The translations under genes and the position numbers were made by a program. From Fimbriosthenelais zetlandica (taxonomy: Eukaryota), in contig OZ365116.1 in NCBI GenBank assembly GCA_977030845.1, positions 17,174,001 to 17,238,000 of the forward strand: 64,000 nucleotides of DNA. Direction: 5' to 3'. Each line of letters opens with the position of its first letter. Positions within the stretch are counted from its first letter, which is position 1. Under the pieces are notes generated by a model. The model did no database searches and was not told where the DNA came from. It saw nothing but the letters and a program-made list of their open reading frames with translations. Positions 3,514-57,338 of this stretch are shown here, in pieces.

Positions 3514-3635
3514 ATCTCAGACAGTGAGAGTGAGACTAGTAGTGAGGGCCACACCAGTGATAGTAGTATACACACCATGCCCTCCGAATCTCAAGCCTCA
3601 TTCGCGAGTAAGAGTGCAGCCATCAGAAAAGCAGG
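3514..3635 (+). CDS. TIAM1: TIAM/sif exon: Ser-rich linker into PH domain (ISDSESETSS...AAIRKAG)
   Basis: Acceptor ttgtattacag; donor GG|gtgagt (phase 2); IRKAG is the start of the TIAM PHn domain. The upstream exon lies outside the window or was not found. Confidence 0.88.
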
Positions 3636-3871
3636 GTGAGTAAAAATACTACCTTTCAATTTAATATGAATGAAAAATTGTCCAGACAGCATTAATTCAT
3701 CAAAGATTTTTTATTAAATCTGGCTTATCAATCTTTAATAAGTCTTAGCTCCCTCAAAACTCTTTCGATTCGATGTGGAAATACGCTCAAAAAGCCATTC
3801 CCGTGAAAAGAGCTTTGTCGTAATTGGCAATAAGGTTTAACAATGAATATTGGTTGGCCTTTTACCTTCAG

Positions 3872-4041
3872 GTGGCTTACTGTTAAGAACTGGCTGATGC
3901 ACAAGAAAAGGAAGTTGGAGCAGGCCCCCAAGCGGACGTGGAAGAAATACTGGGTGTGTCTGAAGGGCACAATGCTCCTGTTTTATAATTGTGATGAAGG
4001 GGAGAGCATCAGGGAGGACAGCATACCTAGACATATGTTAG
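3872..4041 (+). CDS. TIAM1: TIAM/sif exon: PH domain (WLTVKNW...WKKYWVCLKGTMLLFY...IPRHML)
   Basis: Acceptor tttaccttcag; donor G|gtcagt; phase 2 to 1. Confidence 0.95.
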
Positions 4042-4196
4042 GTCAGTATGATAACAACACACATTATCATCTATCTCCTAAATGACTCATACATATGTTC
4101 ACCTTCAAATGAGGCAGAGACTATATATAGGACTATACCTAGCAATATATGGAACTATCTCCTAGTAATTTATAATACCTTTCTTTATACTTGCAG

Positions 4197-4294
4197 TAAT
4201 TGAGGGTGGAATAGCCCAGTCGGTTCCGGAACACCCTAAACGAGAACATATCTTTGCCCTGAGCACAGCGTTCGGGGATGCTTATTTATTCCAG
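4197..4294 (+). CDS. TIAM1: TIAM/sif exon: PH domain ([33 protein letters not shown])
   Basis: Acceptor ctttatacttgcag; donor CAG|gtaaga; the VPEHPK..F.LS..FGD.YLFQ motif is typical of TIAM. Absent from the ORF track. Confidence 0.95.
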
Positions 4295-4626
4295 GTAAGA
4301 TCTGATTCTATATTAGAAGGCAACACTTTCAAGATGTTACCTTTGAAACCATTAAGAAGCACATTGAGATAAGACATATAGAGACGTTATTGTATTTGTG
4401 AGTGGCTCCCGTATCGTGATGTCTCTGTGCTGCTTTCTAATACTAAAAACGCCCAGCCTCCCGATGAGACATCTCATCTTTGTGATTAGCCATTTCCCCC
4501 CGTGATTGCCACGTTCTATCTCGGTGATTTGTTATTTTAACGCCCGATGTTTTGGCTGTCATGACATGCAGGCGTTTTACCTTTGTGATTAGAAGTTTTT
4601 TGCTTTAATTTCGTTTTTAATTCCAG

Positions 4627-4770
4627 GCGACTTCCCAGATCGAGCAGGAGAACTGGATTAGTGCTCTCCACTCGGCATGCGCCTCATCCTTCGCCCGCCA
4701 ACACGGCAAGGAAAACACAATCAAACTGCTGAGAAGTGAAATTCACAAATTAGAAAATAGTATTGACATT
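4627..4770 (+). CDS. TIAM1: TIAM/sif exon: end of PH and start of coiled coil (ATSQIEQENWISALHSACA...LENSIDI)
   Basis: Acceptor tttttaattccag; donor ATT|gtaagt; phase 0-0; 48 codons. Absent from the ORF track. Confidence 0.95.
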
Positions 4771-4820
4771 GTAAGTATAGCTTAATATTCCTTTTATTTT
4801 CAAATTTGTTTTGCCGATCT

Positions 4821-4876
4821 CATTTCATACGTTTCTGACCCCAAAAGGCATTTCATACGTTTCTGGCTCCAAAAGG
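4821..4876. repeat. 28-bp tandem duplication in intron
   Basis: catttcatacgtttctgaccccaaaagg followed by catttcatacgtttctggctccaaaagg (2 mismatches). Confidence 0.9.
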
Positions 4877-4944
4877 GCAATAATACCAATATATTGATGG
4901 ATATAAGTGGTTTGTTTACACGCTTGACCTTGCTTGACCTTCAG

Positions 4945-5127
4945 GATATAAAGATGAAGAAAATGGCGGACCTCCAGCTGACCGTCGTGTCTGACCCACG
5001 AAGCAAGGCGGCCATAGAGAAGCAGATAGCCCAGTGGGATGAGAATCTGGAGAAACTTTACATGGAGCAGTACAGGCTTCGGTGCTACATGGCTTCCCTC
5101 CAGGGATGTGAACTACCCAACCCTAAG
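4945..5127 (+). CDS. TIAM1: TIAM/sif exon: coiled coil ([12 protein letters not shown]...[19 protein letters not shown])
   Basis: Acceptor gaccttcag; donor AAG|gtcttt; phase 0-0; 61 codons. Confidence 0.95.
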
Positions 5128-5262
5128 GTCTTTATCCATTCTTCTCCCTCCCTAATTGATAGGCAAATTCCATGTAGTATACCCAGTTCACCTGACCCAG
5201 GCTTCAGGAATATTCTCATCCCCCATGTCTAATATGTGTGAATATAATATCTTTTCCTTCAG

Positions 5263-5486
5263 ACTCTGCTGACTTATGTTTCCAAGGGAACCAAGGCCGC
5301 CTTGAGCAGAATTGGTGTCTTTACTGTAACATCATTCCACGCTTTGGTATGTGCACGCACGCCACTGGTCACATCCAATATTTACAACAAAAACAAAAAG
5401 AAGGGAGGTCTACTTTCCACCTTTAAGGCCGACAGTGTGACCAGGATCCGACCCCGATCACCCAAACCCTTCAGCCCACAATCAGG
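5263..5486 (+). CDS. TIAM1: TIAM/sif exon: Ex region (TLLTYVSKGTKAALSRIGVFTVTSFHALVCAR...PQSG)
   Basis: Acceptor cttttccttcag; donor GG|gtgagt; phase 0 to 2. Confidence 0.93.
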
Positions 5487-5616
5487 GTGAGTCAATAGCC
5501 CTTAATACTCATCTCATAATAATAGATGTCCTTTAAAATTAACATGAGATCAAGAAATATTGTTTAGATGGATATTCTGCTTTGTATGAAATAGAATAAA
5601 TGGTTTATTTTTTCAG

Positions 5617-5761
5617 CAACCAAGTGTATAAGACTTCTGACACTGATCAACAGTTTGTGGTGGACTTAGTCAGTAAGGAGAGTGAGGAGACGCCTCAAGG
5701 CCCGCCTCGAGATCTCTCCTTCGGTGAAAATATGGTCAGAATCAACATGCCTACAGGCCAG
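5617..5761 (+). CDS. TIAM1: TIAM/sif exon: linker and start of RBD (NQVYKTSD...MVRINMPTGQ)
   Basis: Acceptor ttattttttcag; donor CAG|gtgaga; phase 2 to 0. Confidence 0.88.
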
Positions 5762-5862
5762 GTGAGAAATAAAGATTTTTACTTGCGTAATGATTTTATT
5801 TGTGTACATTGTTAATTCATGACAGTGGAGCTTTGATACTAAATCTACTCATTATTTTACAG

Positions 5863-6024
5863 ACTGTGGTGGTAGGCATCTCAGACAAGATGACAGTCCA
5901 GGAGGTGCTAGAATCAGCTTGTAACAAGCGACAACTAAACCCCAATGATCACTTCATACGCTTCAAGTTGCCTGGTGTGGAGAACTTTAAAATCCCCGAG
6001 AAAACCTCCTTCATGGAGAACGAG
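5863..6024 (+). CDS. TIAM1: TIAM/sif exon: Raf-like Ras-binding domain (TVVVGISDKMTVQEVLESACNKRQLNPNDHFIRFK...)
   Basis: Acceptor attattttacag; donor GAG|gtagga; phase 0-0; RBD-like pattern. Confidence 0.92.
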
Positions 6025-6135
6025 GTAGGACTGAAAAGCCATATAATATGACAACTGAAACCTTACAAACACTGCAATCAGCCTCTGACATTTGATGGTC
6101 CAGCTGCTGTTATCATTGTTTCTGCTTGCTTTCAG

Positions 6136-6319
6136 GCTGAATATGAATCGATCGAGGTGTGTCCCAAGATCATGTTCCAGATGGAGATGGTCAAGTCAGA
6201 GCGTGAGCCAGATTTCGGTATCTCTGTAGAGGCTGAACTGGCGGATGACACAGAGCAGGAGGACGAACTCTGCGTCTTTATATCTGAGGTCAACAAAGGT
6301 GGACTAGGCCATCGCCGGG
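6136..6319 (+). CDS. TIAM1: TIAM/sif exon: PDZ N-half (…PDFGISVEAE…LCVFISEVNKGGLGHRR)
   Basis: Acceptor cttgctttcag; donor G|gtgagt; the FGISV and V..GGL elements are PDZ hallmarks. Confidence 0.93.
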
Positions 6320-7313
6320 GTGAGTCCATGATGTCTCACTCAATTCATCTATTATAAAAGTTAATTAGAACTGATGTTGAATCATTCAATCCTTAGCTGG
6401 TCCTCTGATCTTGATTCTGGGGGTCCATCTAAGGAGAAATATCAGCACTGTCAGTCCAATTGGCAAATCAAGTATAAGTTCATTCTGAAAGGCACCCATG
6501 ACGGTTGAAGTTAGTTGTTGGTTAATACACCCATGGCGCTGTGTTATTGATGAGATGCTTCTCCAGCTATCCACGAGGCGGCGCCACAGATACTGCTCCT
6601 GGAGTAGAACAGTTGGGGGAATGGGCAATGTAGAACAGATGCAGTAGCACACTTGGTCATCATCATAGCAGATTCAGCCTCAATGTTTTTTTTAGAACAA
6701 TGGGTAAATGAATGAAGATGTGTTCATGTTTTTATACAAAATCTGCTCTGAACGATTAGATAATATATACATTTGGGACCCAATACCTCCAATCTTTTAC
6801 CTCATATAAATGAATGATAAAGAATGCTTGGCAGCGAACAAGGCGAGGCCTGGTCCAGGCGAACAAGGCTGCCTTATTTTTGCCATCATTCATACATATA
6901 TGATAAATAATAAATCTGTGCCTGACTTGGCTCATACAGCACGTTTCCTTCCTGGTTCCACGCCAGGTGTTCGCCCCATTACCTCACTTCCTGCCATATG
7001 CATTCAATACGAGAGCCAGGGGAATCACCGTGCCACCAGGAGAAAAAAAAGAAAAGAGTGTTAGGAGAGATTGGAGGAAATTGGCCGGGCTAGATGGGGA
7101 TATTTTGCATTAGGCCTGGTATGTTGGTCCCTGACAGGGCGAGTAAATGTGCCACCTTTGGTAACCCTGATTCACAGGCAGCTGTAGGCAGCCCACCCAC
7201 TTTACACTATACATTCTAATGTCATTTCTTATGTATTGCTCCTGCCATCTTCTCCCCTCATTACTTCTGCCGCATTAAATGACTATAATTAAATGAGATT
7301 TGTTACGTTTCAG

Positions 7314-7580
7314 GTCTGATTATGGGAGATGAGATCCTGGTGATCAATGGTAAAGTGGTCTCAGAGCTAGACATGGTCTACGTGGAGACGTTACTAGCAG
7401 AATCAGAGTTTGTATGTATGACTATCCGCTCATGTCGTGTGGAGAGACCACAGAACACTACGGCTCTCATGGAACACGCTGATGTCTACATTGAGAACAT
7501 GATGTGTCCACCCCCTCCCTCACAGTCACGTATCAGCGACAAGGCCATAGGAGATCTTATTGTTCCAGCTCCAAACTGGG
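7314..7580 (+). CDS. TIAM1: TIAM/sif exon: PDZ C-half and CPPPP motif (GLIMGDEILVINGKVV...CPPPPSQ...LIVPAPNW)
   Basis: Acceptor gttacgtttcag; donor G|gtgagt; GDEIL.ING PDZ motif; symmetric phase 1-1; 267 nt. Confidence 0.95.
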
Positions 7581-13731: not shown

Positions 13732-13823
13732 TCCAACTTGAATCCCGAAGTGATGATGAAGAACAAAAGCCCCAGAAGGACGTGTCAGATCTATCGTCAG
13801 AACAGATCGATCATCTTCTCCAG
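13732..13823 (+). CDS. TIAM1: TIAM/sif exon: acidic linker (VQLESRSDDEEQKPQKDVSDLSSEQIDHLLQ)
   Basis: Acceptor ttgtttatttttcag; donor CAG|gtaagc; phase 1 to 0, bridging exon 7314-7580 and exon 53715 exactly. Confidence 0.82.
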
Positions 13824-13885
13824 GTAAGCTTTTATTTATTGGTATAATCTACAATCTCAAGTTTGCTTTCACCTTTGCCCCGCAG

Positions 13886-14002
13886 GTGACCACTATAGCC
13901 AGTGACTACGGACCACTGCCGGTGCAGGTAGAGGAAAATCAGCGTCTGACAACGTTTATTAGCCGTTGCGTGCACACTGGGTTCCTTACCGATTGCGTTT
14001 AA
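13886..14002 (+). CDS. Candidate alternative (composite) exon: 42-nt cassette 13886-13927 (VTTIASDYGPLPVQ) or read-through terminal exon ending ...FLTDCV*
   Basis: Acceptor ctttcacctttgccccgcag after a 62-nt intron; weak internal donor CAG|gtagag at 13928; frame stays open to TAA at 14000-14002. Confidence 0.5.
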   Translation: MTTIASDYGPLPVQVEENQRLTTFISRCVHTGFLTDCV

Positions 14003-14037
14003 TATTGCGTTGTTTAATTGAATGACGTTGCAGCTGT

Positions 14038-14068
14038 AATAAAATCATTATAGCACTGTATGGTATGT
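14038..14068 (+). terminator. Candidate intronic polyadenylation signal
   Basis: AATAAA at 14038-14043, CA at 14054-14055, GT-rich tgtatggtatgt at 14057-14068; begins 36 nt after the in-frame TAA. Confidence 0.4.
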
Positions 14069-14899
14069 AATCACAGACATTCATTGCAGTTTTAATACAT
14101 TGTCAACCCAGCAGTCATAACACTGTAACTAATGCATATGGAAACAATCACAAATATTCAATATAAAGCTCCGGAAATTAGTCCACAGAGAACCGTGTCT
14201 CAATTAAATATGAAAGCTCCGGGAAATCTAGTGAAACAAGTCAATTACCAGCGATAAAGCCACGTCCAACTGCCTGCACAAAAGGGAAAATCAAGCAGGA
14301 GAAAATCTACTGGGAGGACTGGGTCATTTTACCTTATAACAGTCTATCCCCATAATCCAAGGCAGTGGGCCACTTTCAAAGCCCTTACTACAGCCTTTGC
14401 ATATTGAAACCTCTACCAAGAGCTCAGCCCGCTCTCTCTGGTCGCCTTTATCTGCGCAATTTCCCCCATCAAGGCGGTATCTTATTGAATGGCAGTGGGA
14501 GTGAACATATTATAGAGGGCTGAACGTGTCCCCGGCTAGCTTCCACTGAGCCTACTTTACTGCTAGTCACGTATATTGACTCTGTGATAAATGATTAGAC
14601 TCACTTCCTTTTTCTCTTGGTGAAAAAAGAAAGGGGAGGATATAAATAGGCACATAAGTGGAGGTTGTGAAGTGAGGAGAAATTTCCCGGATCTGTAGGG
14701 GATTCCTGAAATAAACCTAGATCAATGATACTGGCGCTGACACAAGCCACATTTACATACCATTTACCTGAACTTAGTTTTTACCAAATCATTGACTTTT
14801 CTTCTTCATTATTTATTATATGAGAATCATTTATCATCGTTCCTCAGGCCTAGTCTTTGACCCTGCTTTCACCGCTGAGATTCTTTCCACCCTTATGTC

Positions 14900-35730: not shown

Positions 35731-38619
35731 ATGTACCTTCTCTGTGGCTTATGATCAATTCCTCACATCATGCCATAAAATATCCTATATTATCTTCCCC
35801 ATAGCCCGGGTCTTAATCTGTCATACATTCACTCCATGTATGATTGTCATATCTTTTGGCACCTCGGAGCCTTTCCGCAGCGTTAAGGCTCCCACTAATA
35901 ATACATAGAGGCATTATAAGAGTGGGGCAGATTTTGGGAGGCCCCCTGGGAGGCCCTTGAGCTTCAATCAGTCCATGAGGTGGTTTTATCATTGTGACAT
36001 GCACTGATGTTCGCTAATGGATCGCCTCATATACTCTTATCATTTGGCTGCACCAAGCCGATCTCCCTCCGTTTGGCCATCATTCGACACATGTCTAAGT
36101 AGAATCACTTGTTCTTGGTGAAATAACAAATTTTATGCATTGGAAAACAATAAACATTGTACACTATTTCATGAAATATTTAGACAAGTAAATGGGGAGT
36201 TGCTGACAGAAAATCTGCTTAGTATGACCAGGTCTACTGAATAATCAGGCGTGCATAGTGCTGCCTATTAGTGACATGCATAAAATGTGACATGACTTCA
36301 CGCCTTTAACTCTTTGATGGTATATTTCTTCCAGCGGAAATTGACTTCCACTCTTGACATCATTGCATTGTGGAATCTAGCCCATTCTTTATACTATAAG
36401 TATAGTCAATAAGATGGGTTGCCTTGTCACATGTGATTTGTACTGATGTCACATACAATTGATGTCATAAAAGCACATCCCTTCATCGTGGGTGGGTTTT
36501 GCTGGTGTATGGTAGGTTTATTGCTAAATCGGCACTGTTTCTAACCCACATGTGATGCCATTGTTTGTCCTTGGACATTAACATAGCCTGAGGAATTAAA
36601 GGCCATCAAATATTTGCATTATGGATAAGCATTAGCCGCAGGACATAAGTGATTGAGTGAAGATTTAATGATAGATGGTGGATTTCAATCTGACATCTAT
36701 AAATAGCTGATATAAATGATTGCCATTTCAGAACACGATATCTTCCCCGCTGATCAATTAAAGTTCATGGTTTTGCGTTACTTCAGGAATAGCCTATCAA
36801 TCTAAAATGAGCAGTTGTACCTACACAACCCTGCTGAACTAGCAGGATATTTTTACTTTACCCATATGGAGTGAAAGTAGTCTAAGTTACCTTCCTAAGG
36901 GCAAAAACCTTAGCTGTTTTATTGTGATGGACTGGGAAGAGAGTCGGTAATGGTTTGGCCCACAATGTGGTGAGATGCTATAGGGACATCAATATTTTCT
37001 TTCACTGGCCACCTGTAGTCGTCTAGGTCGTCCTATAGACGTCTACCATGTGTTTACCGTGGAACATTTGGACCAGGCCAGCACGGCCACCAACCAAAAC
37101 CAATATTTATACTTACGATAGCTCCCTGTCCCAAATCACATTATTACTTGCCAGGGAAGAGTGACCTCTTCTGGGGACACTCTCCAGCCCTCTGTAAGCT
37201 CTACTGCACCCTTTATCCTATTATCTGTATATCTGTATTTGATTTAATTGCTCTGAATTCAAGAACACGTTAAGAAACGTGAGCTTACCCAATGCTAAAC
37301 AGTTGCCTCGAGCTTAGTCCACTCTATAGAGAAAGAACCAGGTGGCCAATCCTTCTGAATCGTCAGTCTGAGAAGCTTACTTCAGCCGTTTGCCACGGGG
37401 CGTCGCCACTGTATATACATGCACTTAAATCACACAGGTCCCGCCAGACGGCCACGGCCACCAATGATTAGCCAAATCATATAATACGAAACTACATACG
37501 AAATAATACGAAACTATATACGACATTTGCATAGGCATTTCTAAACCTGGATCAGTGGCAGATTGGTTTGTTTACTGGTGTACGAAGTATATGCTACATT
37601 TGGTTTGACAGAACATATATTTAGGCTGGATGAAAGTAGTGTTAGTGTTAGATGTGGTAAGCTTTGAGGTAAAGTGGTCCAAATTTATCTTTCATCATCT
37701 CTGGAAAAGAGGTGTAAATGTCCATGATGTCTGAAGAGATGTCAGAGGAGGGCTGAGTGGGGAAACCAATACCACCTCCCCTCACACAACCTGATAGCTC
37801 CTGTTTTTTAAAGGGAAAAATAAACCAGGGGCAGGAAAAAAACTCTCTCATCGGATGTCTTCATCTTCTGGAGGTTCCGGAGAATAGTGATGACATGTTT
37901 GAGAGACTTTGTAAGAGATACATGAGGCATCTCGTTGCATTCCCAGAGTGAAGGCAGGTCTATGGTATGGAATGGCTGGGTGTATGTAAGACAAGCTCTA
38001 TATTCACCCTGCTCTCTAAGTACATGGCAGACCCCTGTTTACCTCCTGGTCCAGCCACCCAGGTAAACATGAAAGCTTGTATTCCACAGCTCAGTGATGA
38101 ATGTTAGGTGCTCTATGGTCGTCATTTAGGTGGGTCACTCCTCTAACTGACTCATTATACCTCGTTCTGTCTGTATTGGGCTGTTAGAGAGGCTGCTAAC
38201 AGACGAGGAGGTGACGAGGTGCAGGGTTAAAGAGCCCAGATAATGAGCTAGACTACTGAAAGTGGTGCAAATACACAAAGTGCTTTCCATTGTGAAAGCA
38301 CCTAGCAATTTGTACCTGTAAAAGATGCTTATCTCCACCAAACTCTCCCAGTCAAGGTTGAAATGAGTGAGCATTTTTTTCGGGATCTGTTAATTTGCTA
38401 TAAGAGAGAGTTCTCGTGTAACTGATAAGAAGGTACGGTATGGTTATAGAGTAACTAGATTATGGTTCTCTTCTGATAAGGGTGTATTCTCCAGGGTGAC
38501 CCTATCACTCATATCACCATTCACCTGTGCCAATCTGCCTTGTCAGCATCTTTTCCACATATATACTGCATGCCTCTAGGTACTCTACCAATGGCTCTGT
38601 AGTCCACGATGGGGCTAAC

Positions 38620-52330: not shown

Positions 52331-53714
52331 GGTTGAAGTAACCACAGGACCAGCTCACTGGAGAAAATACCAAACCGTTTGGTGAATTTCCCTTTCACCC
52401 CAGTATCAATCAGGCAATAGGACAAGCTGGCAGCCTCGAGTGCCGGCTACATCACTCATTCATAATCCTGATGCATAATAGTTAGGGTTGGTGGTGTGAT
52501 GGATGGAGGCACACATGGGTTCTCCTATTTTAAATACCACCACCACGCCCATGTACGAGAACGTGGCTGAATCACTCACCTATATGTTCTCACCTTCACT
52601 GACTGGACTCTAATACATTACACACCTTCTAAAAGATGTAAACTGGTTCCCCTTAACTCACAGCGCCAATAAATGTCAATAAAATCACACAATTGTGTAC
52701 ATATTTCCCTTGGCAATAATAATATGGTAGGCGTATTGGTGCATATAATTCAAAGTTACCATTCCCGACACAATTTTATTACGAAAGTCAGTACATGTGT
52801 GTTGTCTTATATATTCTGTGCCTGTATATCTAAATCAAGGAAGATGACAGATTTCCATCTATAGACAAGTTACTTAAGCCTAATGTAAATGCCTGTGGGT
52901 TTAGCAGTATCTTGGGCATGCCTGGAGGTTTGATTTAGAATGCTTTTAGGACTGAGGTCAGAGTGAGAAGAGGCAGGGGCAGGGATGAACAGGTCTAACC
53001 ATACAATCATTAAAGCACATGGCGGAAGGTCTCCACCATCAAAGTGGGCCTCATACAAAACAGTGTTGACCCAAAGCATCATGCTGCAAACACTGAAATC
53101 ATATATTTTCGCCCGCTAGATATTTTGATGATTTGCTACATATCTGGGCAAATATTATGCTTCGCCATGACAAGATTATTTATTCCCAATGCAATTGAAT
53201 GTACTCCCCAGAAATGTCTATGTATTTCCGCAAAGAGGTAGGCATGTACTCTACAGATGATAGATTAAAAATTACCTTCACACAAATGTATATCTCATAC
53301 TACCAAAAGTTATTGATTCTAGCCTGTGTTAAGTGCATATTCTGCCCTCGCTGAAAGGAAAGGGGATAAAGATGCGACACTAAAGACATACTACTCGTAT
53401 AGAAAGAAGGAAACAACAGTTGTCCTTGTACAGCGATGAAAAGATTGCTTTGATTATTATTTTCTCCTTTGAAAAGCTCTGTCTTAGTACGGGCTTAATG
53501 ATAAAACGTCATGTAATAGCTTTCAATTCTTACATTACTCTTTTTCTTAAAAGATTTCGGGCTTTGTTAAAATGCATCATTTGTCTCGTCCATTTCAGCT
53601 TTAATTGATCGAGGCAATGTGGACTGCCACAATGCAATTCTGAAGCCATTTTAACCTGCTTTATGTTACTAATGATAACTGGTTGTAATCATTTATAAAT
53701 CTGTTTACTTTCAG

Positions 53715-53873
53715 GGAGCTGAGCAGGTGACACATTTTTGCCGCCTGTTACATCAGCCCACGCCGGATAACCCGGCCACGGAGGAGCTGGTCCATGTCAA
53801 ACCGCTGAGCGACTCTCAGAAACTCCGCAAAGTTATCATGGAACTGGTGGACACTGAGAGAGCCTACGTCAAG
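53715..53873 (+). CDS. TIAM1: TIAM/sif exon: start of DH (GAEQVTHFCR...LSDSQKLRKVIMELVDTERAYVK)
   Basis: Acceptor gtttactttcag; donor AAG|gtctgt; phase 0-0; canonical DH helix 1. Absent from the ORF track. Confidence 0.95.
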
Positions 53874-57143: not shown

Positions 57144-57338
57144 GATTTGACATGTCTCATCGAGCGCTATCTGGAACCACTGAAAGAGGAGACGTTCTTG
57201 TCTGGAGAAGACATCGAGCAATTGTTTGGCAACATTCAAGAGATTGTGGCCTTCCAGAAAATGTTCCTACAGAGTCTGGAAGAAGCCATAGAGCTGGAGC
57301 CAAACTTCAGTACTATCACAGATACCAAGCAATTCAGG
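57144..57338 (+). CDS. TIAM1: TIAM/sif exon: DH (DLTCLIERYLEPLKEETFLS...LFGNIQEIVAFQKMFL...KQFR)
   Basis: Acceptor tttttgtcgtccacag; donor AGG|gtaagg; phase 0-0; 65 codons. Confidence 0.96.

What the first reader, a model, noticed from the sequence alone, without database searches (positions are those of the whole stretch)
13886..14068. Composite exon with stop and polyA signal just before the 40-kb intron: predicted GEF-less TIAM isoform
Seen: a strong acceptor lies 62 nt after exon 13732-13823. After 14 in-frame codons comes a weak donor (gtagag). If it is ignored, the frame runs 24 more codons to TAA (14000-14002), followed by AATAAA (14038), CA and a GT-rich element. Inference: three outcomes are possible - skip, a 14-aa insertion, or intronic polyadenylation giving PH-CC-Ex-RBD-PDZ ending ...FLTDCV with no DH. 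That product would be a scaffold-only or dominant-negative form, made without transcribing 40 kb more. A weak donor before a very long intron is the known configuration favouring intronic polyadenylation. The D-x-V end could itself be a class III PDZ ligand (speculative).
Basis: partly seen in the sequence, partly recalled or inferred. Interest (0 to 1): 0.7.

Follow-up and report, generated by a model that had tools for sequence, protein, structure and literature searches.

The report
Unproven early-ending exon in TIAM gene
Just after one exon of an invertebrate TIAM/still-life Rac-activator gene lies a short stretch that reads like an extra final exon, which would make a protein without its catalytic part. 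All the signals are in the DNA, but nothing I could test shows the cell uses them, and RNA data could not be reached.

Summary
The linker exon is 13732-13823. A 62-nt gap follows, then ccgcag|13886, 14 open codons and CAG|gtagag at 13928. Read-through runs 24 more codons to TAA 14000-14002, followed by AATAAA 14038, CA and a GT-rich run.

The gene is a TIAM/still-life Rac-GEF of a spiralian, probably an annelid. The normal junction 13823>53715 is supported by a relative's intronless copy and by about 60 homologues, none with an insertion there.

Against use:
- By a matrix built from this gene's own 12 splice sites, the acceptor is middling and the donor no better than a random GT. About 95 equally good pseudo-exons exist in the window.
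- Three relatives that keep the linker exon have no counterpart.
- No DH-less homologue turned up.

For use:
- The stretch from acceptor to polyA signal is one of only two dense CpG clusters in 64 kb.
- Its polyA signal has the best context of the 43 AATAAA hexamers.

I judge it most likely a cryptic, unused or rarely used site (0.55). A real, young isoform lacking the GEF domain has about 0.25.

The parts
3538..7580 (+). Upstream coding exons of the TIAM/still-life gene (PH, CC-Ex, RBD, PDZ), ten exons
   Evidence: Pfam finds PH, Tiam_CC_Ex and RBD on exon translations. Exon borders come from alignment to P0172. Thirteen exons concatenate to 688 codons without a stop.
13732..13823 (+). Constitutive linker exon (...SSEQIDHLLQ), with donor CAG|gtaagc
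   Evidence: It aligns to P0172 and to the linker of about 60 homologues. Orthologous exons were found in L004, L006 and L014.
13824..13885 (+). 62-nt would-be mini-intron ending in the candidate acceptor ccgcag
   Evidence: Sequence. It is shorter than every confirmed intron of this gene; the smallest is 101 nt. The acceptor scores 2.3 bits, the top 9% of AG sites.
13886..13927 (+). Candidate 14-codon cassette (VTTIASDYGPLPVQ), followed by donor-like gtagag
   Evidence: The donor scores 0.5 bits, rank 1200 of 3413 GT sites. No homologue has residues at this junction.
13928..14002 (+). Read-through extension of 24 codons ending FLTDCV, plus TAA
   Evidence: The codon-usage score of the extension alone is -1.85, which is non-coding-like. 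A tandem near-duplicate ATTGCGTT(G)TTTAAT at 13992-14018 contains the stop.
14038..14069 (+). PolyA-signal-like set: AATAAA, CA 14055-14056, GT-rich 14058-14069, with TGTA just upstream
   Evidence: Of 43 AATAAA on this strand, only this one and 41469 have an equally GT-rich downstream element. Only this one also has CA and TGTA in place.
13881..14026 (.). CpG cluster: 11 CpG in 146 nt, observed/expected about 1.2, in a window with 0.42
   Evidence: It is one of two such loci in 64 kb. It is absent at the same place in L004, L006 and L014.
53715..53873 (+). First DH-region exon (GAEQVTHFCRLLH...), the normal partner of donor 13823
   Evidence: Many relatives carry this exon with the same start.

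Best explanation
The stretch 13886-14069 is most likely a cryptic terminal-exon-like site inside the 39.8-kb intron of a TIAM/still-life Rac-GEF gene. The normal mRNA joins 13823 directly to 53715, and this site is unused or used only at a low level.

Shown: all the signals are in the DNA, the skip junction is the one supported by homologues, and the stretch is peculiar to this lineage.

Inferred: the spliceosome normally ignores the acceptor at 13886. That acceptor would need a 62-nt intron, shorter than any confirmed intron here, and its paired donor is no better than a random GT. The polyA signal would therefore stay silent like the other 27 AATAAA of this intron. The CpG richness is then best read as a sign of young or locally unmethylated DNA, not of a coding exon.
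For: - Homologues: a relative's intronless copy (P0172/L001) reads ...SSEQIDHLLQGAEQVTHFCRLLH, matching 13823>53715. About 60 bilaterian homologues have no residue between QIDxLL(K/Q) and xAEQVT.
- Splice sites, scored with a matrix from the gene's own sites: acceptor 2.3 bits against 6-11 for most real ones, and donor 0.5 bits at rank 1200 of 3413. About 95 equally good open pseudo-exons exist in the window.
- Chance: terminal-exon-like sets are about as common on the control strand.
- Intron size: the smallest confirmed intron is 101 nt, against 62 nt needed here.
- Relatives: L004, L006 and L014 keep the linker exon but have no similar peptide, acceptor or CpG patch after it.
- Isoforms: every homologue hit in two searches carries the RhoGEF domain, so no DH-less form was seen.
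- Coding signal: the extension scores as non-coding (-1.85).
Against: Three features coincide on this stretch.
- The densest CpG cluster, one of 2 loci in 64 kb, runs exactly from the acceptor to just before the polyA signal. At a lower cut-off (at least 9 CpG per 147 nt), 2 of the other 8 clusters are real exons.
- The polyA signal has the best context of the 43 hexamers.
- The 38 codons score above 94% of stop-free intronic windows for codon usage (p = 0.058).

Other points also limit the case.
- Real donors of this gene can be weak too (AAG|gtcttt, GAG|gtagga).
- The relatives sampled are distant: the linker exon is 39-57% identical, so a young exon would not be seen in them.
- No RNA was examined.
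Confidence: 0.55

Rival explanations
1. It is a real, lineage-specific alternative last exon. Donor 13823 splices to 13886, the weak gtagag is ignored, and cleavage follows AATAAA 14038. The acceptor is transcribed about 40 kb before the competing acceptor at 53715, so it has a kinetic head start. The product is a TIAM protein with PH-CC-Ex, RBD and PDZ but no DH-PH, ending FLTDCV. It would act as a scaffold or as a competitor of the full-length GEF.
For: - All signals are present and in frame.
- The CpG cluster is co-extensive with the exon.
- The polyA context is the best of 43 hexamers.
- The 14-codon part looks coding (+4.87) and the whole 38 codons score p = 0.058 against intronic open frames.
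- The site sits at the PDZ/DH domain boundary, before the gene's longest intron in the window.
- GEF-independent roles of TIAM-1 acting through its PDZ domain are documented in C. elegans (PMC6370339, found).
Against: - No RNA evidence could be obtained.
- The splice sites are unremarkable, and the 62-nt intron is below this gene's observed range.
- Three relatives have no counterpart.
- No DH-less homologue is in the databases.
- The extension codons look non-coding.
- The CpGs show no codon-position pattern and continue past the stop.
Confidence: 0.25
2. It is an in-frame 14-residue cassette. The exon 13886-13927 is spliced in using gtagag and joined to 53715, inserting VTTIASDYGPLPVQ between the linker and the DH region.
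For: Phase 0 on both sides keeps the frame. The 14 codons have a coding-like usage score of 4.87. This gene does use some weak donors.
Against: The donor scores like a random GT. None of about 60 homologues has any insertion at this highly conserved junction. A 42-nt exon with a weak donor facing a 40-kb intron is hard to define.
Confidence: 0.05
3. The CpG-rich block is not an exon. It is either a small regulatory element kept unmethylated in the germ line, or a recently arisen piece of DNA that has not yet lost its CpGs. On this reading the splice-like and polyA-like motifs are incidental.
For: - CpG observed/expected is about 1.2, higher than in any real exon of the gene (0.24-0.84).
- The CpGs run on past the stop codon.
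- A repeated TTGCGT motif and a tandem near-duplicate lie at 13992-14018.
- The patch is absent at the same place in three relatives.
Against: No repeat copy was found elsewhere in the window. There was no RNA-family, tRNA or structure signal, and no target-site duplication or poly(A) tail is visible. Methylation state cannot be tested here.
Confidence: 0.15

Closest known systems
Intronic polyadenylation with a 'skipped terminal exon', giving C-terminally truncated proteins (general mechanism; from my own knowledge of the literature, e.g. Tian et al. 2007)
   Same: It has a 3' splice site, an in-frame stop and AATAAA with a GT-rich element inside a very long intron, and the predicted loss of downstream domains.
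   Different: Use is not shown here. The acceptor is only middling and the upstream mini-intron would be 62 nt.
Kalirin-7 (Rho-GEF isoform whose alternative 3' exon adds a PDZ-binding C-terminus; from my own knowledge)
   Same: In both, a Rho-family GEF gene has an alternative last exon that would create a new C-terminus ending in a PDZ-ligand-like motif.
   Different: Kalirin-7 keeps a GEF domain and is experimentally established. The form predicted here would lose the only DH domain and is unverified.
TIAM-1 of C. elegans acting independently of GEF activity (PMC6370339)
   Same: It shows that the non-catalytic part of a TIAM protein, including the PDZ domain, can have a function of its own.
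   Different: That work concerns the full-length protein and GEF-dead mutants, not a natural truncated isoform.
TIAM2 long and short isoforms (PMC6394906)
   Same: It is a TIAM-family gene that makes isoforms with different domain content and opposite effects.
   Different: From my own knowledge, the short TIAM2 form keeps the catalytic C-terminal half, the opposite of what is predicted here.

Membership tests
TIAM / still-life (Sif) Rac-GEF | N-terminal PH domain followed by the TIAM coiled-coil/Ex region | tested here: met
   Pfam PH (E 1.2e-4, on a single-exon fragment) and Tiam_CC_Ex (E 2e-16) on exon translations.
TIAM / still-life (Sif) Rac-GEF | Raf-like Ras-binding domain and PDZ domain | tested here: met
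   RBD has E 1.5e-7. The PDZ exons give no Pfam hit as fragments, but they align at 61-76% identity to the PDZ region of P0172. Pfam PDZ hits are on record for the whole P0172 protein (marked weak) and for P0011.
TIAM / still-life (Sif) Rac-GEF | DH (RhoGEF) domain after the PDZ-DH linker | tested here: met
   RhoGEF has E 2.8e-9 on exon 57147-57332. Exons 53715, 57144 and 62410 align to the DH region of homologues.
Intronic-polyadenylation terminal exon | Usable 3' splice site upstream of the polyA site | tested here: inconclusive
   The tract is pyrimidine-rich and ends in CAG, but scores 2.3 bits by the gene's own matrix, below 10 of 12 real sites. The intron would be 62 nt, against a minimum of 101 nt seen here.
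Intronic-polyadenylation terminal exon | In-frame stop followed by AAUAAA, a cleavage site and a GU-rich downstream element | tested here: met
   This is met at sequence level only.
Intronic-polyadenylation terminal exon | Polyadenylated transcripts ending at the site | not testable with these tools
Intronic-polyadenylation terminal exon | Conservation of the exon in related species (usual for functional alternative exons, but not required) | tested here: not met
   L004, L006 and L014 keep the linker exon but have nothing similar after it. All three relatives are distant.
Class III PDZ ligand | C-terminus of the form [D/E]-x-hydrophobic | tested here: met
   The conceptual C-terminus is ...T-D-C-V. 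This is a motif match only. Binding cannot be tested here, and the protein itself is hypothetical.

The most novel reading that the evidence does not exclude
A young, species-specific last exon lets this animal make a TIAM/still-life protein with all targeting domains but no catalytic DH-PH. The choice would be made by a race between an acceptor 62 nt downstream and one 40 kb away. The new tail (…TDCV) might bind a PDZ domain, perhaps the protein's own.
Probability: 0.25. Interest if true: 0.5.

Novelty: new member of a known kind. Interest (0 to 1): 0.3.

Why it matters
TIAM proteins activate Rac at sites chosen by their PH-CC-Ex, RBD and PDZ domains. At least one TIAM protein also acts without its GEF activity (PMC6370339). 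A natural isoform that keeps the targeting domains and drops the catalytic ones would be a built-in scaffold or competitor, made without transcribing 40 kb more. No such TIAM isoform turned up in my protein or paper searches. As it stands, this is an unverified isoform prediction in one unidentified invertebrate, so its value is as a cheap, well-defined target for RNA data.

Tried and rejected
- Own-species proteins: exact look-up of two window ORFs found nothing in the protein collection.
- Cassette in other proteins: about 60 homologues were inspected and none has an insertion. blastp-short of the 38-residue peptide against all 213 fetched proteins gave only chance matches. The protein atlas gave nothing recognisable.
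- Short fragments spanning the junction: a search with a piece of P0172 returned only genomic read-through fragments of the DH-start exon.
A degenerate pattern scan of metagenome contigs returned six unrelated matches.
- Repeat or transposon origin: no other copy was found in the window.
- Non-coding RNA: there was no Rfam hit, no tRNA and no fold signal on either strand.
- Copy of an exon edge, a phenomenon other notes report in this genome: rejected, because only 9 nt (GCAGGTGAC) are shared with the 53715 exon.
- Truncated homologues among the short hits of the representative search: all are genomic read-through fragments.
- Assembly accession numbers of a relative: they gave no paper.

Full report
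**What is there.**
- The exon 13732-13823 is 92 nt, translates to ...SSEQIDHLLQ and ends on a codon boundary at CAG|gtaagc.
- Sixty-two bases later, a pyrimidine-rich tract ends in ccgcag before 13886.
- Fourteen open codons (VTTIASDYGPLPVQ) run to CAG|gtagag at 13927/13928.
- If that donor is ignored, 24 more codons end in ...FLTDCV and TAA (14000-14002).
- AATAAA follows at 14038, CA at 14055 and TGTATGGTATGT at 14058-14069.
- The next exon starts at 53715 (ttcag|GGAGCTGAGCAGGTG...) in phase 0. Skipping and 14-codon inclusion therefore both keep the frame, and the intron is 39.8 kb.

**The gene.**
- Exon translations hit PH, Tiam_CC_Ex, RBD and RhoGEF in Pfam.
- A search of protein representatives with the PDZ-end exon led to full-length 'protein still life' / TIAM proteins of molluscs, annelids, nemerteans, echinoderms and insects.
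- By summed tblastn score, the nearest is an unnamed 998-residue protein (P0172) from an intronless 7-kb ENA contig (L001). The nearest named one is from the annelid Owenia fusiformis. Other agents' notes on this genome also say 'probably annelid'. I take that only as agreement.
- Using P0172 as a guide, I placed 13 exons. They concatenate to 688 codons without a stop.

**Which junction is supported.**
- P0172 reads ...LIVPAPNWMQVD...SSEQIDHLLQGAEQVTHFCRLLH. This matches 7580>13732 and 13823>53715 with nothing in between.
- In about 60 homologues from across bilaterians, the motif QI(D/E)xLL(K/Q) is followed directly by xA(E/D)QVT. None has an insertion there.
- All 43 hits of one search and all 21 hits of the other carry the RhoGEF domain. 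The length limits of those searches would have admitted a form truncated after the PDZ, so no DH-less homologue was seen.

**Are the signals more than chance?** I built matrices from the gene's own 12 donors and 12 acceptors.
- The candidate acceptor scores 2.3 bits. That is the top 9% of all AG sites but below 10 of the 12 real ones.
- The candidate donor scores 0.5 bits, rank 1200 of 3413 GT sites, so it is no better than random.
- About 95 open, phase-0 pseudo-exons in the window have both sites at least this good.
- Acceptor plus AATAAA plus a GT-rich element occurs at 9 loci on the + strand and as 14 pairs on the - strand, which serves as a control.
- A simpler count gave the same picture. 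There are 102 pyrimidine-rich acceptor-like sites in 64 kb, and 24% of them have 38 open codons.
- The would-be 62-nt intron is shorter than any confirmed intron of this gene. The smallest are 101, 111, 135, 155 and 174 nt.
- On the other hand, real donors here include weak ones such as AAG|gtcttt, AAG|gtctgt and GAG|gtagga. A poor donor alone is therefore not an argument against use.

**Features that do stand out.**
- The window is strongly CpG-depleted (observed/expected 0.42). Yet 13881-14026 holds 11 CpGs (about 1.2), running from the acceptor to just before the polyA signal.
- Only one other locus in 64 kb is as dense. That locus, 37387-37521, lies partly in a short tandem repeat.
- At a lower cut-off (at least 9 CpG per 147 nt), two of the eight other clusters are true exons, so such clusters are enriched in exons.
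- This one, however, is richer than any real exon (0.24-0.84). It continues past the stop, and its CpGs show no codon-position pattern (positions, read against the frame of 13886).
- Of the 43 AATAAA on this strand, only 14038 and 41469 have an equally GT-rich downstream element. Only 14038 also has CA and TGTA in place.
- Codon usage of the 38 codons is intermediate. It lies above 94% of stop-free intronic windows and below 92% of exon windows. The 14-codon part looks coding-like and the 24-codon extension does not.
- I chose the CpG and downstream-element measures after seeing the sequence, so their nominal rarity overstates the evidence.

**Relatives.** I recovered the orthologous linker exon in three relatives.
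- The loci are L004 (2022-2105), L006 (5480-5563) and L014 (minus strand, 18403-18311). Their introns to the DH exon are about 8, 4.7 and 16.5 kb.
- None has a similar peptide, an acceptor at a similar distance, or a CpG patch after the exon.
- They are distant: the linker exon is only 39-57% identical. This rules out an old conserved exon but not a young one.
- L004 and L006 share an 11-nt island, CTGGAATAAAG, about 90 nt after the donor in otherwise unalignable intron. It may be chance.

**Other origins tested.** I found no repeat copy in the window, no Rfam family, no tRNA and no significant fold on either strand. The peptide has no recognisable relative.

**What could not be done.**
Junction and poly(A) reads, the decisive data, were therefore out of reach.
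- The species itself is not in the protein collection.
- No close relative's DNA could be fetched.

**Verdict.**
- Cryptic site, used rarely if at all: 0.55.
- Real, young alternative last exon giving a TIAM protein without its DH domain: 0.25.
- Regulatory or recently arisen CpG-rich block with incidental motifs: 0.15.
- In-frame 14-residue cassette: 0.05.

If real, it would be a new member of a known kind (intronic polyadenylation truncating a signalling protein). It would be of moderate interest because TIAM proteins have GEF-independent roles (PMC6370339).

Noticed in passing
L001:1-7088: A relative's 7-kb ENA contig carries the whole TIAM/still-life coding region without introns. The region is split into overlapping reading frames (998 + 497 residues) inside the DH domain. 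It is either a processed retrocopy or a low-coverage (2x) cDNA-like contig. It records the canonical exon junctions.
   Followed up: partly
L004:2190-2200 and the aligned place in L006 (about 90 nt after the linker-exon donor): An 11-nt island CTGGAATAAAG, containing AATAAA, is shared by two relatives in otherwise unalignable intron just after the linker exon. It could be chance, or a hint that polyadenylation near this exon occurs in that lineage.
   Followed up: partly
window:13992-14018: A tandem near-duplicate, ATTGCGTTTAAT / ATTGCGTTGTTTAAT, contains the TAA stop. The motif TTGCGT occurs three times in 13967-14010.
   Followed up: no
window:14160-14232: A direct repeat of about 22 nt (ATATAAAGCTCCGGAAATTAGT / ATATGAAAGCTCCGGGAAATCTAGT), with copies about 48 nt apart, lies just downstream of the candidate polyA site.
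   Followed up: no
window:37361-37540: This is the only other CpG cluster of equal density. Part of it is a short tandem repeat of ATACGAAA(CT)-like units.
   Followed up: no
L014:18130-18150 (minus strand): In a relative, about 170 nt after the linker exon, the intron contains ttcag|GGAGCTG. These are the same letters as the acceptor and first 7 nt of this window's DH-start exon (53710-53721). It is reminiscent of the 'copied exon edges' that other notes report for this genome.
   Followed up: no
window:53873-53879 and 5127-5133: Two homology-supported donors are far from consensus (AAG|gtctgt, AAG|gtcttt), so this gene tolerates weak 5' splice sites.
   Followed up: partly
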